Shown here in pieces: positions 48,580 through 55,263 of a stretch of 64,000 nt of DNA (position 1 is the stretch's first letter; each line of letters opens with the position of its first letter). The notes under the pieces are model-generated. The model saw only the letters and a program-made list of their open reading frames with translations, was not told the DNA's origin and did not search any database. Source of the stretch: Neoconidiobolus thromboides FSU 785 (taxonomy: Eukaryota > Fungi > Entomophthoromycota); contig MU626328.1 in assembly GCA_025603075.1 (NCBI GenBank), positions 33,522 through 97,521 on the forward strand, read 5' to 3'. The translations under genes and the position numbers were made by a program.

Positions 48580-51500
48580 TTATTGTGGACGATTCATACC
48601 ATTATGAAAATTCATATGCTGTTGTTGTTGTAAGTTAACTTGAGCTAAATTACGTTGTTGTGCATTTAACATTTGTTGTTGATTGATAAGTTGTTGGGCC
48701 ATACCAGGATGATTAATAAATGGCTGATTCATCTGTTGTTGAGCTAAATTAGCTTGAAATAAATTAGGTTGTCCCATTTGTTGTTGTGCAAGTTGTTGAG
48801 CATAATGTTGTTGAGCTTGATAAGCTTGAAAATTCAAAACTTGCTGTTGTTGCTGTGGGTTGAAGTTTTGTACCCGTTGTTGTGCCATTGCTGGTTTCGC
48901 TCCAATCGCTATCTGCTTTTTAACTTGTTGTTGTAAAATGTTTTGTCCTGGGTTGATACGCCCCAACTGTGAATTAAATGCCTGCGCATTAGAAAATTGC
49001 ATCTGCTGTGGTACAGTATACCCTTGCTGGCTCATGTGTGCCATTTGTGCTCTTAATGCTGCTGCATTATCCATACTCATACCATTATTCTGGCCACTAG
49101 AAATAGCACCTTGATTATTAAGATAACTCGTTGCTACTTGCTTCTGTAAAGGGACAGCTGCTTCCTGATTATTATTAATGACCCTTGCTTGTTGCTGTTG
49201 TTGCTGTTGTTGCTGTTGTTGCTGTTGATTTCTGATATTTTGGTTTATGGCTTGAACATTTTGAACATTTTGCTTAATAGCATTAGCATCCATTTTTTGA
49301 TTTGTTGCTTCACCAAACAAGCCTACGTTAGGAATAGGCGAATTGATAAAGGACAATCCCATCAATCTTGCACCATTTTTGAAAAAAATAAAGCCATAGC
49401 TACCAGGTGGTTTACCTTCTGGGTTATTCATAAGTGAAAGTGCAACTGAATTATCTTGTTCCATTTTTTTAAGTACATTTAAAAATACTTGGTGGCTGGG
49501 ATCTTCGGCACTAGGAATTAAAAAGAAAGACGGACGCATATGTTGTTTACAATAACTAATAAGACCTTCAAGGTTACATGGTCTAAATGAGTTGATAAAG
49601 ATTGCTGAAGGCCATTCATTGGCATGAAATAATGCAGTGATTTCTTCAGGTTGTGGAATGGACCCTGCTGACACCATACATGATTGTTCAATAAACTGCC
49701 CATTTTGAGCAAATCTATATCCAAATCTACCCGTCCACAATTTAACTGCCCCATTTCCAGCCTTTTGCATACCTGCTATATTATTGACTTGAGTTTGAGT
49801 AGCTCCATTGATTGCATTTTGTGGTGTAGAATGTTGAATTTGATTTTGTACCGCATCCATATTTGGTGGTCTTTGCATATACTGCATATTATTTTGAGTT
49901 TGTGTCACTGCGTTCGTATTATAGGCCTCATTTTGATACATTTGATTAGGTACTTGTTGGACTTGTTGAGGAAGATTATTTGCCTGCATATTTTGTTGCA
50001 TGGCTTGTGTATGAACTTGTTGGGGAAGGTTATTCACCTGCATATTTTGCTGAACTTGTTGGGGACGATTGTTTACTTGGATGTTTTGTTGCATAGTTTG
50101 AGGATGACTATTTACCTGCATGTTTTGTTGCATAGCTTGGGTATGAACTTGCTGATGATTACTCATTTGCATATTTTGTTGCATAGCTTGAGCCTGGACC
50201 TGTTGAGGAGTATTTTTCACCTGTATATTCTGCTGTATAGCTTGGGAATGAGCTTCTTGTTTAGCCGATGGCGAATTAGCCATAAAATACTGTGCTTGCA
50301 TTTGATTAAAATTTGGATTCCCTTGAAACATTGGATTCATTGGTCTACCTCCCGTCATACTCATATTTCCACCCACCTGTGAGTAACCATTTGGTTGGGA
50401 GTTCTGATTAAATTGATTAAAAGATTGTGGTGCACTAACTTGGTTTTGATTTGTTTGTTGGATAACTCCATTATTTTGCATCATAGCTTGGTGTCCACTG
50501 ACCATCATACTCGAGTATTCCGTAGCCAAAGGTGAGATATTTGGGTTAGGGGCATTATAGTTGCCATTTCCTGCTGGTTGAGCTTTATTTATAGTTGATA
50601 CATTATTTTGATTTTGATTTTGATTTTGATTTTGATTTTGACTTGAAGGAGTCATATTTGCTGGAGTTACTGCATCTTTTTGCACTAAGTTTTGATTATT
50701 AGTTTGGGTGGGATCATTAGATGCAGATGGGGTAGGTGCTTGACCATTATACTGATCAAATATAAGATTTTGTTGTGGAGTTGGTACTGTGGTTTCTGGT
50801 TTAACGTTAACACTTGTCTTTTCTTTTTTAATTGTAGTATTAATATTAACTTTAGAATTCTTCCTAGATCCCATACTTTTCCTAGTTCTGGCTCCCTTAG
50901 ATGATACCGTACGTTTCATATTTGTGCTAACGATCGGCTCGGCAGGGGTAGGTGGTTGCGTCAAATTAGTTGCTTTATTTAATTCAATTGGTGCTGGACT
51001 ATCTACATATAATGGCGTATTTGTTAGATCAATAGTTGCACTTGATAGTTTCCTTCTGTTTTTACTATTATTGGGCTTATTTGTTACTTGAGATAAAGGT
51101 TGGTTATTTATTTCGGTTGGAACTGAAGTTGGAACTGAAGTTGGAACTGAATTTGGAATTTGATTTTGAGCTGAATTTAGAGCTTGGCTTGAAATTTGAC
51201 TTGTTTCTGGAATAGGAACTAAAGGATTAGGTTTATTGGGGGATTGCTTTGTTGAATTATGTTTATTAGGAGATGGGTGTGGTAAGTTAGAGTTATTAGG
51301 AGATTGTTTATGTTCATTAGATAATTTACTTACATCTTCAACGTTAGTATTTGATGCAATAGTTTGTATCGATTCTTGTTTGATTTGAGAAGGAGTAGTC
51401 TCTTCGGGCTTAGAAACCGTTGCTTCTATTTTTTTAGCTTTTATTGGTAAGGTTTGTAAGTTAGGAGAAGTTAATTCATGTTTTTTTGCTTTATAAGGAA

Positions 51501-52221
51501 GAATAATTAAATGTTCTGGTAATTTATAATCCTCAGGGATGGATATACCTGATATACGAGAAAAATAATGAGTATTACCTTTGACTGTGTATTTCGTAAC
51601 TTTAGTTTCGGGGTTATTTATTTTATCAATTAAGACATGAACTTCATCCAATAAATGATGTGTTGTTATTGTCGACATAAATACGTTATATTCTTTAAGG
51701 CACAAACATAATCGATCTAAGTTAAAGCCCTCATATTTTTGATCGAAATTATATTGAATCCTTTTATTATAAGGTATAGTTCGACTTACGGCAATGACAT
51801 GACGTATAGGTTCTTGATTACTTTGAGGATTTCTTTCCCTTTTTTCTTTATCAAATAGCTCCAAACATGCACCTACAGCTTCGTCAAGTACTGAATATCT
51901 AGGCCCACCATAATTGAATTTAGTTTTTTCAAGCCTAGCTAAGAACTCTTGTTTATTTGTTGTAAATGTACTCTTTTCTAAAGGAGCTGGACACTTTGAT
52001 AAAACATCACGATAAACGATACTTGAAAATTTTATACAAGGTAACGCTTTTCTAGAGTCCCCATTTTTGGATGCTATTGTTACAGGAAGTGAAAGTTGGT
52101 TGACAAAAGGGGTTATAAGGTTGTCAAACATATACTTAAAATGATTTTTCATACCCTGGGTACCATCAATTAAGAATACACACAGTATGTCGTTTGGTGT
52201 TGAAGGTATTTGATTAGTCAT
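48580..52221 (-). CDS. MED25: Mediator subunit MED25-like protein (VWA + ACID/PTOV-like + Q/N-rich), intronless
   Basis: VWA motifs CVFLIDGT, EFLARLEKTKFNYGG, VLDEAVGACLELFD, HVIAVSRTIPY. Middle domain KLWTGRFGY...NEWPSAIFI...RLMGL. Gln-rich C-terminus. Confidence 0.75.
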   Translation of the reverse strand: MTNQIPSTPNDILCVFLIDGTQGMKNHFKYMFDNLITPFVNQLSLPVTIASKNGDSRKALPCIKFSSIVYRDVLSKCPAPLEKSTFTTNKQEFLARLEKTKFNYGGPRYSVLDEAVGACLELFDKEKRERNPQSNQEPIRHVIAVSRTIPYNKRIQYNFDQKYEGFNLDRLCLCLKEYNVFMSTITTHHLLDEVHVLIDKINNPETKVTKYTVKGNTHYFSRISGISIPEDYKLPEHLIILPYKAKKHELTSPNLQTLPIKAKKIEATVSKPEETTPSQIKQESIQTIASNTNVEDVSKLSNEHKQSPNNSNLPHPSPNKHNSTKQSPNKPNPLVPIPETSQISSQALNSAQNQIPNSVPTSVPTSVPTEINNQPLSQVTNKPNNSKNRRKLSSATIDLTNTPLYVDSPAPIELNKATNLTQPPTPAEPIVSTNMKRTVSSKGARTRKSMGSRKNSKVNINTTIKKEKTSVNVKPETTVPTPQQNLIFDQYNGQAPTPSASNDPTQTNNQNLVQKDAVTPANMTPSSQNQNQNQNQNQNNVSTINKAQPAGNGNYNAPNPNISPLATEYSSMMVSGHQAMMQNNGVIQQTNQNQVSAPQSFNQFNQNSQPNGYSQVGGNMSMTGGRPMNPMFQGNPNFNQMQAQYFMANSPSAKQEAHSQAIQQNIQVKNTPQQVQAQAMQQNMQMSNHQQVHTQAMQQNMQVNSHPQTMQQNIQVNNRPQQVQQNMQVNNLPQQVHTQAMQQNMQANNLPQQVQQVPNQMYQNEAYNTNAVTQTQNNMQYMQRPPNMDAVQNQIQHSTPQNAINGATQTQVNNIAGMQKAGNGAVKLWTGRFGYRFAQNGQFIEQSCMVSAGSIPQPEEITALFHANEWPSAIFINSFRPCNLEGLISYCKQHMRPSFFLIPSAEDPSHQVFLNVLKKMEQDNSVALSLMNNPEGKPPGSYGFIFFKNGARLMGLSFINSPIPNVGLFGEATNQKMDANAIKQNVQNVQAINQNIRNQQQQQQQQQQQQQARVINNNQEAAVPLQKQVATSYLNNQGAISSGQNNGMSMDNAAALRAQMAHMSQQGYTVPQQMQFSNAQAFNSQLGRINPGQNILQQQVKKQIAIGAKPAMAQQRVQNFNPQQQQQVLNFQAYQAQQHYAQQLAQQQMGQPNLFQANLAQQQMNQPFINHPGMAQQLINQQQMLNAQQRNLAQVNLQQQQHMNFHNGMNRPQ
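49950..50245 (-). repeat. Imperfect coding tandem repeat (QAMQQNMQVNNxPQQV-like), about six units
   Basis: Recurrent CATATTTTGTTGCAT / TGCATGTTTTGTTGCATAGCTTG units; also (TTTTGA)n at about 50607-50640 and a poly-Gln tract at about 49190-49228. Confidence 0.8.
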
Positions 52222-53772: not shown

Positions 53773-55263
53773 ATGGTCCAAAGTTTACTCTTGACGTTAA
53801 GTATATTAGCCCCCATTGTTTATCTAGCTTATCGAATTTTCCATTGTCGAAAAGAACTACTCCCATTACCAGGTATAAGTTTATATCAAAGTTTAGAAGC
53901 TTTTTTTATTGGAAAACCGTATGATATCACGATCGAAGACTATTATGATCCGGTATTAAAAGAGAAAAAAATTGTACGTACCTGGATGCAAGGGGAATGG
54001 GCCGTAATAGTATCTAGTCCTAAAATAGCAAAAGAAATCTTTATGTATCCCAATAAATATCCCAAAAACATACCTCAAGATATCTTCCCAGAAGCTTTAT
54101 TTTCTAAATTTATGGGAGTAAATGTTATCTTTTCCAATTATACGACTTGGAAAAGACATCGTTCCGTGGTTAATCCGCCCTTCCATAAACAATTTGAGCC
54201 AAAGATTTTTGGTCAAATTACTAATCAATTTTCCAAAATATTATTAGATAAGAAAGGAAAAGACATTGATGTATTTTCCTATATGCAATCCATTACGATT
54301 GATGCCTTAGGTAAAGCTGTTTTAGATGTAGAATTTGATGCAATCCATGATCCAAATGCTCCCTTTTTAAATGCTTATAATAATATTTTGTCCAATTCTT
54401 TTGTGCCCATTTATTTGTTTTTTCCTTTCTTAGATAAACCCTGGAATCCCTTTAGAGCTAAAGTGTTCGATGACCTTAAGTGGCTTCAATCTTATTTTGA
54501 TCAAATATTAGATGAAAGAAGAGAAGAAATTAGACAAAAGAAAGATTCAAATGATTTACATAACGCCCATGATGATTTATTAACATTAATGATACAATCT
54601 CAAGAAAAGGATGGGTTAAATAATAAAGAATTAATGGATAATATATTAGGATTTTTTTTAGCAGGTCATGAAACAACAGCATGTGTGTTAGGAGTAACAT
54701 TATTTTTTTTGGCCAAATATCCTGAAATTCAAGAGAAATTATATCAAGAAGTTCGATTTTTATTAAAAAAACCAGATACTATTCCTACTATTGAGCAAAC
54801 AAAACAAATGACTTATTTATTTGCTATTATGGAAGAAAGTTTAAGATTATATCCACCAGTATCTAGATTACCAGATAGAGTTTGTAAAGAAGAATTACAT
54901 TTTGATAATTATATTATACCGAAAGGTACTAGATTAGCATTAAGTATTTATTCTTTACATCGAGATCCAGAAATTTGGGGGGAAGATAGTAATGAATTTA
55001 AACCAGAAAGATTTTTAGATGAAAATATGAATGAAAAGGAATTGAAAACTAAATTTATTACTAATGGATTTGGCGGGGGTTCAAGAATCTGTTTAGGACT
55101 TAATTTTTCAAGATTAGAACAAAAGGTTGTGTTGTCTATGCTGGTTAATAAGTTTAAAATTAAGTTTTCTGAAAAGAATTGTAACAGAGATAGGATTAAA
55201 CTGACTCCTCACCCTATCTTATATCCTAAAGAATTATATTTGGATTTTGAATTAAGGGAATAA
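53773..55263 (+). CDS. Cytochrome P450, intronless
   Basis: N-terminal anchor, AGHETT I-helix, EESLR (ExxR), PERF, FGGGSRICLG heme motif. Confidence 0.96.
   Translation: MVQSLLLTLSILAPIVYLAYRIFHCRKELLPLPGISLYQSLEAFFIGKPYDITIEDYYDPVLKEKKIVRTWMQGEWAVIVSSPKIAKEIFMYPNKYPKNIPQDIFPEALFSKFMGVNVIFSNYTTWKRHRSVVNPPFHKQFEPKIFGQITNQFSKILLDKKGKDIDVFSYMQSITIDALGKAVLDVEFDAIHDPNAPFLNAYNNILSNSFVPIYLFFPFLDKPWNPFRAKVFDDLKWLQSYFDQILDERREEIRQKKDSNDLHNAHDDLLTLMIQSQEKDGLNNKELMDNILGFFLAGHETTACVLGVTLFFLAKYPEIQEKLYQEVRFLLKKPDTIPTIEQTKQMTYLFAIMEESLRLYPPVSRLPDRVCKEELHFDNYIIPKGTRLALSIYSLHRDPEIWGEDSNEFKPERFLDENMNEKELKTKFITNGFGGGSRICLGLNFSRLEQKVVLSMLVNKFKIKFSEKNCNRDRIKLTPHPILYPKELYLDFELRE

What the first reader, a model, noticed from the sequence alone, without database searches (positions are those of the whole stretch)
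48580..52221. Full-architecture MED25 in a fungus
Seen: a 1213-aa intronless ORF. Its N-terminal ~230 aa align block by block, from memory, with the human MED25 VWA domain (CVFLIDGT vs VVFVIEGT; EFLARLEKTKF vs EFVTWLDGIKF; LDEAVGACLELFD vs IAEGLSTALQLFD; SRTIPY vs CNSPPY; ISGISIP vs VRGLVLP). A second folded island at about 49340-49760 resembles the ACID/PTOV activator-binding barrel (KLWTGRFGY vs LAWSGVLEW; NEWPSAIFI vs EQWPQKLIM; RLMGL vs IFMGL). Established: MED25 is the Mediator tail subunit bound by VP16, ETV/PEA3 and ATF6 in animals and is the jasmonate hub PFT1 in plants; it is absent from budding- and fission-yeast Mediator. Inference: this lineage retains an animal/plant-like Mediator tail, with a repeat-expanded Q/N-rich region that may drive condensates.
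Basis: partly seen in the sequence, partly recalled or inferred. Interest (0 to 1): 0.72.

Follow-up and report, generated by a model that had tools for sequence, protein, structure and literature searches.

The report
Fungal MED25 with VWA and ACID domains
This intact, apparently transcribed gene of an AT-rich, insect-pathogen-type fungus encodes the Mediator subunit MED25, with both its docking (VWA) and activator-binding (ACID) domains. MED25 has been reported in non-yeast fungi since 2008, so this is a correct but ordinary annotation.

Summary
The 1213-aa ORF at 48580-52221 (minus strand) is real. Contigs of one run, probably RNA, cover it without joints. Differences in related strains are mostly synonymous (31 of 39).

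- **VWA domain.** Residues 15-190 match Pfam Med25_VWA above the curated cutoff (E 8.5e-13, 48.9 vs 21 bits). Human and mouse MED25 are the only PDB sequence hits.
- **Second island (about residues 824-969).** It has no direct Pfam or PDB sequence match. It is significantly similar to the same region of fungal proteins that carry Med25_VWA (Massospora cicadina, E 1.3e-8; Diversispora eburnea, E 4.6e-6). In a 16-sequence family alignment, PF11232 (MED25 ACID/PTOV) is the only Pfam family hit, in 12 members, 3 above cutoff.
- **Fold.** AlphaFold2 with that alignment gives pLDDT 81.9. Foldseek's top four PDB hits, and five of its top six, are human MED25 ACID, followed by SPOC and Ku barrels. Fold alone does not separate ACID from SPOC (Z 11.2 vs 12.5).

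The vertebrate SD1/SD2 and LxxLL parts were not found.

Novelty is low. Bourbon (2008) reported Med25 in zygomycetes and basidiomycetes. UniRef already names the Glomeromycota proteins MED25, and one of them carries both Pfam domains. Mediator membership, activator binding and condensate formation are untested.

The parts
48580..52221 (-). Complete MED25 gene: single 1213-codon ORF plus stop, with no intron detected
   Evidence: ORF list. Contigs of run X2 cover 48588-52189 at depth about 540-720, with about 0 in both flanks and no joints. Of 39 listed differences in relatives, 31 are synonymous and 30 fall at third codon positions.
51508..52197 (-). N-terminal Med25-type VWA domain (residues about 9-238; Pfam match 15-190). 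The MIDAS position reads D-G-T-Q-G, not D-x-S-x-S.
   Evidence: PF11265 E 8.5e-13, 48.9 bits against a cutoff of 21; generic VWA only 13.8 bits. PDB hits are MED25 6w1s_T (E 0.006), 7emf_Y and 8t1i_T. Local phmmer gives 139 bits to P0005 and 110.8 bits to Massospora P0001 over residues 9-238.
50827..50919 (-). Conserved basic Ser/Lys/Arg motif inside the disordered linker (residues 435-465). Probably a nuclear localisation signal (inferred).
   Evidence: This is the only block of the linker with invariant columns (M435, R437, S440, K454, K457, K465) in the full-length alignment with P0001, P0005 and P0007.
49783..50724 (-). Q/N-rich low-complexity linker (residues about 500-813). It holds six copies of a roughly 13-residue 'QQN[IM]Q' unit and an (NQ)6 run, and is expanded relative to its relatives.
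   Evidence: Q+N fraction is 0.32-0.52 per 50 aa. TRF finds a 39-nt period x3.3 at 50019-50146 and a 6-nt period x6.2 at 50605-50641. Motif positions are 662-741. Relatives have gaps here.
49315..49752 (-). ACID/PTOV-type beta-barrel domain (residues about 824-969)
   Evidence: phmmer against 1.84 billion representatives: P0001 1.3e-8, P0003 1.9e-6, P0004 4.6e-6, P0005 3.8e-5; the full-length hits (P0001, P0004, P0005) carry PF11265. PF11232 is the only family hit among the 16 aligned islands (12/16; 3 above cutoff). AF2 pLDDT 81.9, pTM 0.79. Foldseek top hits are human MED25 ACID 2xnf (8.7e-5), 9ccv_B, 2l23 and 2l6u. The Atlas top fold match is a plant MED25 cluster, TM 0.60.
48583..49314 (-). 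Q-rich C-terminal tail (residues 970-1213) with a Q12 run. The terminal N-x-P-Q end is shared with relatives.
   Evidence: Composition. 9-nt period x4.3 at 49189-49227. Invariant N1210 and P1212 at the end of the alignment.
51116..51178 (-). 12-nt tandem repeat (about 5 copies, the PTSV run in the protein) that varies in copy number between strains
   Evidence: TRF. A 12-nt insertion of one repeat unit behind 51140 in runs X4 and X6 (table 4).

Best explanation
The ORF encodes the MED25 orthologue of an early-diverging, entomophthoralean-type fungus. By analogy with animal and plant MED25, the N-terminal VWA domain would dock the protein onto the Mediator tail. The ACID beta-barrel, separated from it by a roughly 580-residue disordered linker, would bind transcription-factor activation domains and so recruit Mediator and RNA polymerase II to target genes. 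A basic motif in the linker probably acts as a nuclear localisation signal. The Q/N-rich linker and tail are flexible low-complexity spacers that change length quickly. Shown here: the intact and conserved ORF, the VWA family membership, the homology and fold of the second domain, and the domain order. Inferred: Mediator association, activator binding, the NLS, and any role for the Q/N-rich regions.
For: PF11265 Med25_VWA scores E 8.5e-13, above cutoff, and the only PDB sequence hits are MED25. The island matches the same region of Med25_VWA-bearing proteins of Massospora cicadina and Diversispora eburnea at library-wide E 1e-8 to 4e-5. PF11232 is the only Pfam family hit in the island family: 12 of 16 members, with P0015 30.6, P0011 26.3 and P0009 26.2 bits against a cutoff of 25. 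Family profiles place human MED25 ACID chains among the top PDB hits, but only at E 0.19-0.4. The AF2 model is confident (pLDDT 81.9). Its best Foldseek matches are human MED25 ACID and its best Atlas match is a plant MED25 cluster. Language-model neighbours include PF11232 clusters, which is a lead only at score 0.83. Purifying selection shows as 31 synonymous against 8 non-synonymous differences, with 1 non-synonymous of 14 in the island. Coverage is transcript-like and unspliced.
Against: The window's own island has no direct Pfam or PDB sequence match, so ACID homology is transitive plus structural. VIA-align scores SPOC domains (Z 12.5) as high as MED25 ACID (Z 11.1-11.2), so the fold alone does not discriminate. 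The island core is nearly neutral (net +1, pI 7.9) whereas the Glomeromycota cores are basic (pI 9.4-10). By my own knowledge, not tested here, human ACID uses basic surfaces to bind acidic activators. The whole-protein Pfam scan returns nothing. No biochemical evidence links any fungal MED25 to Mediator. The run called RNA is only a guess by the tool.
Confidence: 0.9

Rival explanations
1. The second island is a SPOC-type domain (a phospho-CTD or phosphopeptide reader, as in SHARP or PHF3) rather than an ACID domain. The protein would then be a VWA-SPOC factor that is only distantly related to MED25.
For: VIA-align ranks the SPOC domains of SHARP, PHF3 and SPOCD1 at Z 11.4-12.5, level with or slightly above MED25 ACID at Z 11.1-11.2. 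Foldseek lists SPOC domains directly after ACID.
Against: No member of the island family hits Pfam SPOC, and PF11232 is the only family matched. Foldseek's four best hits, and the best PDB sequence-profile hits, are MED25 ACID. The N-terminus is specifically Med25_VWA. ACID, SPOC and Ku barrels are known to share one fold (my own knowledge).
Confidence: 0.04
2. It is another VWA-plus-barrel protein of the Ku or INTS13/INTS14 type (DNA-end binding or Integrator), mislabelled as MED25 because of the shared VWA + barrel layout.
For: Ku70/80, bacterial Ku and INTS13-INTS14 barrels align at Z about 10. These proteins also combine a VWA domain with this barrel.
Against: No Ku or Integrator Pfam family is hit in any piece of the protein. 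The VWA scores 48.9 bits for Med25_VWA against 13.8 for generic VWA. The long disordered linker between the domains and the Q-rich tail are MED25 features. The closest relatives are named MED25 in UniRef.
Confidence: 0.02
3. It is a decaying or functionless remnant: a MED25-derived gene that no longer joins Mediator, on its way to the loss seen in ascomycete yeasts.
For: Both domains are very divergent (about 11% structure-based identity to human ACID; no direct Pfam hit on ACID). Low-complexity expansions are large. The ACID core is nearly neutral in charge.
Against: The 3.6-kb ORF is intact in an AT-rich genome. Listed differences in relatives are 31 synonymous against 8 non-synonymous, and nearly all non-synonymous ones lie outside the two domains. 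Coverage is transcript-like. Both domains, a linker motif and the C-terminal end are conserved in relatives.
Confidence: 0.04

Closest known systems
Human/mouse MED25 (ARC92/ACID1; PDB 7emf_Y, 6w1s_T for the VWA; 2xnf, 2ky6, 2l23, 2l6u, 9ccv_B for ACID)
   Same: An N-terminal Med25-type VWA without a DxSxS MIDAS motif, a disordered linker, and then an ACID beta-barrel with flanking helices.
   Different: Sequence identity is very low (about 10-12% in ACID by structure alignment). No SD1/SD2 or NR-box Pfam domains and no LxxLL motif were found. The linker is much longer and Q/N-rich, there is a Q-rich tail, and the ACID core is nearly neutral.
Plant MED25 / PFT1
   Same: The order VWA, middle region, ACID, glutamine-rich C-terminal region. 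The best Atlas fold match is a Streptophyta MED25 cluster (TM 0.60, 127 residues).
   Different: No direct sequence match was obtained here. The jasmonate/MYC2 partners are plant-specific.
Fungal MED25 orthologues already in databases and literature: Rhizopus oryzae, Phycomyces and basidiomycetes (Bourbon 2008, PMC2475620); Glomeromycota proteins named MED25 in UniRef (Diversispora, Acaulospora, Gigaspora); Massospora cicadina KAI0226512 (listed as 'hypothetical protein')
   Same: The same two-domain layout. The island and the VWA are directly homologous. Gigaspora rosea P0015 carries both PF11265 and PF11232 in precomputed Pfam.
   Different: The window protein is the longest of the set (1213 aa against 721-966). 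It shares only 19-26% identity in the island, and its ACID escapes the Pfam model.
SPOC domains (SHARP, PHF3, SPOCD1) and Ku / INTS13-14 barrels
   Same: The same beta-barrel fold (Z about 10-12.5).
   Different: There is no sequence-family match, and the partner domain is Med25_VWA.

Membership tests
MED25 (Mediator subunit 25) | N-terminal Med25-type VWA domain (Pfam PF11265) | tested here: met
   E 8.5e-13, 48.9 bits against a cutoff of 21, residues 15-190. The PDB sequence hits for this region are MED25 chains only.
MED25 (Mediator subunit 25) | Direct match of the window's own sequence to the ACID/PTOV model (Pfam PF11232) | tested here: not met
   No Pfam hit for residues 814-980 at E up to 10. 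No PDB phmmer hit to ACID.
MED25 (Mediator subunit 25) | ACID domain shown by family-level homology and fold | tested here: met
   The island is homologous to the islands of Med25_VWA proteins. 12 of 16 family members hit PF11232 and no other family, 3 above cutoff. The AF2 model (pLDDT 81.9) has human MED25 ACID as its top Foldseek hits, E 8.7e-5 to 1e-3. SPOC scores equally by Z.
MED25 (Mediator subunit 25) | Domain order: VWA, disordered linker, ACID, disordered C-terminus | tested here: met
   Residues 15-238, 240-813, 824-969 and 970-1213.
MED25 (Mediator subunit 25) | Vertebrate-type SD1/SD2 regions and the LxxLL nuclear-receptor box (lineage-specific, not universal) | tested here: not met
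   No Pfam hits outside the VWA. No L-x-x-L-L motif in the protein.
MED25 (Mediator subunit 25) | Physical membership of the Mediator complex (docking on the tail through the VWA) | not testable with these tools
   Needs purification and mass spectrometry, or a complex structure.
MED25 (Mediator subunit 25) | Binding of activation domains by ACID | not testable with these tools
   Only the net charge was computed: +1, pI 7.9, less basic than the Glomeromycota cores.
SPOC domain proteins | Match to a SPOC sequence family | tested here: not met
   No SPOC Pfam hit in any of the 16 islands. Only the fold is similar (Z 11.4-12.5).
Ku / INTS13-INTS14 type VWA-barrel proteins | Match to the Ku or Integrator sequence families | tested here: not met
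   No such Pfam hit. Only the fold is similar (Z about 10).

The most novel reading that the evidence does not exclude
Entomophthoralean fungi may keep a working metazoan/plant-type activator-docking subunit (MED25, perhaps with MED23). Its ACID surface has drifted to near-neutral charge, and its Q/N-rich linker has expanded and varies between strains. That would imply a set of activator partners unlike the acidic activation domains bound in animals and plants, in a microbial system where MED25 function and linker-driven clustering could be studied.
Probability: 0.1. Interest if true: 0.4.

Novelty: new member of a known kind. Interest (0 to 1): 0.2.

Why it matters
The result gives a firm name and domain map to a gene whose closest named relative (Massospora) is still listed as 'hypothetical protein'. 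It shows that the ACID domain, and not only the VWA, survives in Zoopagomycota-type fungi even though Pfam's model misses it. This supports the view, already published, that MED25 predates the animal-fungal split and was lost in ascomycete yeasts. It also corrects statements such as the one in MedProDB (2021) that Med25 has not been reported in fungi. It does not open a new question, because function in any fungus remains untested.

Tried and rejected
- **Whole-protein Pfam scan:** no hits. The domains had to be scanned separately, probably because of low-complexity bias.
- **Word-index searches with the window's island and VWA regions:** nothing found. The tool's length limits and the high divergence may explain this.
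- **Single-sequence AF2 of the island:** unusable, pLDDT 38.6.
- **Family profiles against PDB sequences:** MED25 ACID is among the top hits, but only at E 0.19-0.4. With alignment A2 an isochorismatase ranked first at E 0.067. This is suggestive, not significant.
- **Glomeromycota-only profile against the whole window protein:** a meaningless negative score, due to Q-rich bias.
- **P0002 and P0006 from the big search:** repeat proteins and spurious hits.
- **Naming the organism independently:** failed. Exact look-ups of the MED25 and P450 products found nothing, and the P450's Atlas neighbours were uninformative. The lineage rests on the nearest MED25 relatives and on unchecked notes of other agents.
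- **Bourbon 2008 supplementary data:** not held.
- **Profile-profile comparison with a canonical ACID alignment:** not possible.
Full report
**Observation**

The window holds a single 1213-codon ORF on the minus strand at 48580..52221. The two plus-strand ORFs inside it (49684..50382 and 50789..51091) are low-complexity mirror images of the Q/N-rich coding strand. GC is 31-39% in the ORF and 19-23% in both flanks.

Contigs of run X2 cover 48588-52189 at depth about 540-720. Depth is about zero in the flanks and there are no joints. The only breaks are at two simple repeats. The tool only guesses that X2 is RNA, but gene-limited coverage is what a transcriptome gives.

Related strains or species (runs X4, X6, X10) differ mainly by transitions. 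Of the 39 best-supported differences inside the ORF, 30 fall at third codon positions and 31 are synonymous. Only one of the 14 in the second island changes an amino acid, at its edge. The gene is intact and under purifying selection.

**N-terminal domain**

Scanned whole, the protein hits nothing in Pfam. Scanned alone, residues 1-240 match PF11265 Med25_VWA at E 8.5e-13 (48.9 bits against a cutoff of 21, residues 15-190). Generic VWA reaches only 13.8 bits.

The only PDB sequences matched are mouse and human MED25: 6w1s_T at E 0.006, then 7emf_Y and 8t1i_T. The MIDAS position reads D-G-T-Q-G, against E-G-T-A-N in human, so no DxSxS motif is present.

**Second island**

Residues 814-980 have no direct Pfam or PDB sequence hit, and the word-index search found nothing. 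An exhaustive phmmer search of 1.84 billion representatives returned six hits.

- Two (P0002, P0006) are repeat proteins and spurious.
- Four align over almost the whole island: P0001 (E 1.3e-8), P0003 (1.9e-6), P0004 (4.6e-6) and P0005 (3.8e-5).
- P0001, P0004 and P0005 carry an N-terminal Med25_VWA (E 1.9e-14 to 1.9e-26). P0003 is a C-terminal fragment.
- P0001 is a 'hypothetical protein' of Massospora cicadina. P0004 is Diversispora eburnea, named MED25 in UniRef.

A search from P0004's island added eleven more Glomeromycota-type proteins, about half of them named MED25 in UniRef. One of them, Gigaspora rosea P0015, has both PF11232 and PF11265 precomputed.

In the 16-sequence island alignment A2, PF11232, the MED25 ACID/PTOV family, is the only Pfam family matched. 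Twelve members hit it, with a best E of 3.6e-7, and three score above the 25-bit cutoff. Family profiles put human ACID chains among the top PDB hits, but only at E 0.19-0.4.

**Fold**

AlphaFold2 on the single sequence failed (pLDDT 38.6). With alignment A2 it gave pLDDT 81.9 and pTM 0.79: a beta-barrel with three main flanking helices and a short C-terminal one, spanning model residues 12-156.

Foldseek against the PDB ranks human MED25 ACID first (2xnf at E 8.7e-5, then 9ccv_B, 2l23 and 2l6u; 2ky6 is sixth). SPOC domains and Ku barrels follow. VIA-align gives Z 12.5 for the SHARP SPOC domain and 11.1-11.2 for MED25 ACID. These are tied, so fold alone cannot separate ACID from SPOC.

The best ESM Atlas fold match is a plant MED25 cluster (TM 0.60 over 127 residues). 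Language-model neighbours include two PF11232 clusters at score 0.82-0.83, which is a lead only. Sequence family, fold and the Med25_VWA partner domain together identify the island as an ACID domain.

**Other parts of the protein**

- The full-length alignment with P0001, P0005 and P0007 shows one conserved block in the linker. It is a basic Ser/Lys/Arg motif at residues 435-465, probably a nuclear localisation signal (inferred). The C-terminal N-x-P-Q end is also conserved.
- The linker (residues about 500-813) and the tail (970-1213) are 30-50% Q+N.
- They contain six copies of a roughly 13-residue unit (39-nt period), an (NQ)6 run, a Q12 run and a 12-nt repeat.
- The 12-nt repeat differs by one unit in runs X4 and X6. 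A 3-nt deletion occurs at 48851.
- The window protein is longer than its relatives mainly through these regions.
- No LxxLL motif and no SD1, SD2 or NR-box Pfam families are present.
- The ACID core is nearly neutral (net +1, pI 7.9), against pI 9.4-10 in most Glomeromycota cores.

**Organism**

I could not name the organism independently. The VWA is closest to P0005/P0008, which are unnamed transcript-like Logan contigs (139 bits), and then to Massospora cicadina (110.8 bits). Glomeromycota proteins score 41-66 bits and human only 15-20 bits. That fits an entomophthoralean-type fungus. Other agents' notes on this genome name Neoconidiobolus thromboides or a Conidiobolus. I did not check those notes.

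**What is already known**

- Bourbon (2008, PMC2475620) reported Med25 and Med23 in Rhizopus oryzae and Phycomyces, and Med25 in four basidiomycetes. He found none in ascomycetes and inferred an origin before the animal-fungal split followed by losses.
- Nagulapalli et al. (2016, PMC4770211) include fungal Med25 in their disorder statistics.
- MedProDB (2021, PMC8342855) nevertheless states that Med25 has not been reported in fungi.
- Public databases already name the Glomeromycota proteins MED25.

**Verdict**

This is a MED25 orthologue with VWA and ACID domains, a new and very divergent member of a known kind. Mediator association, activator binding, the NLS and any condensate role are inferences. 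Interest is low.

Noticed in passing
P0016 (Dentiscutata erythropus, 750 aa), residues 262-438: This protein has an ACID-like domain but no Med25_VWA, together with precomputed Zn2Cys6 (PF00172) and GATA (PF00320) DNA-binding domains. Its ACID core is acidic (net -2, pI 6.0), unlike its relatives. It is either a real ACID/transcription-factor fusion or paralogue, or a merged gene model.
   Followed up: no
P0012 (958 aa), labelled Anthurium amnicola in UniRef: A 'plant' MED25 that is 54% identical in the ACID region to the Glomeromycota proteins. It is probably an arbuscular-mycorrhizal fungal transcript in a plant transcriptome.
   Followed up: no
window 50827-50919 and 48583-48600 (minus strand): A conserved basic motif (residues 435-465) inside the otherwise unalignable linker, and a conserved C-terminal N-x-P-Q end. 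Both are shared with P0005, P0007 and Massospora P0001. The gene model of P0001 seems to run on past this end.
   Followed up: partly
window 51140 and 48851: In-frame length differences between strains or species inside low-complexity parts of the gene: a 12-nt repeat unit inserted at 51140 and 3 nt deleted at 48851 (table 4).
   Followed up: no
window 53773-55263 (+): An intronless 496-aa cytochrome P450. Its nearest language-model clusters are CYP3-like 'unspecific monooxygenases' of rotifers and chordates (score 0.99). The exact sequence is not in the protein collections queried.
   Followed up: no
ESM Atlas neighbours of residues 814-980: The nearest feature-space cluster is an unnamed 339-aa family, mostly from Basidiomycota, ranked level with PTOV1/PF11232 clusters (score 0.83). 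It may represent short ACID-only proteins in basidiomycetes.
   Followed up: no
Literature: [quoted passage not shown] This contradicts Bourbon 2008 (PMC2475620).
   Followed up: yes
window 49684-50382 (+) and 50789-51091 (+): Antisense ORFs of 232 and 100 aa inside the gene. They are Leu/Ile/His-rich mirror images of the Q/N-rich coding strand and are not genes.
   Followed up: partly
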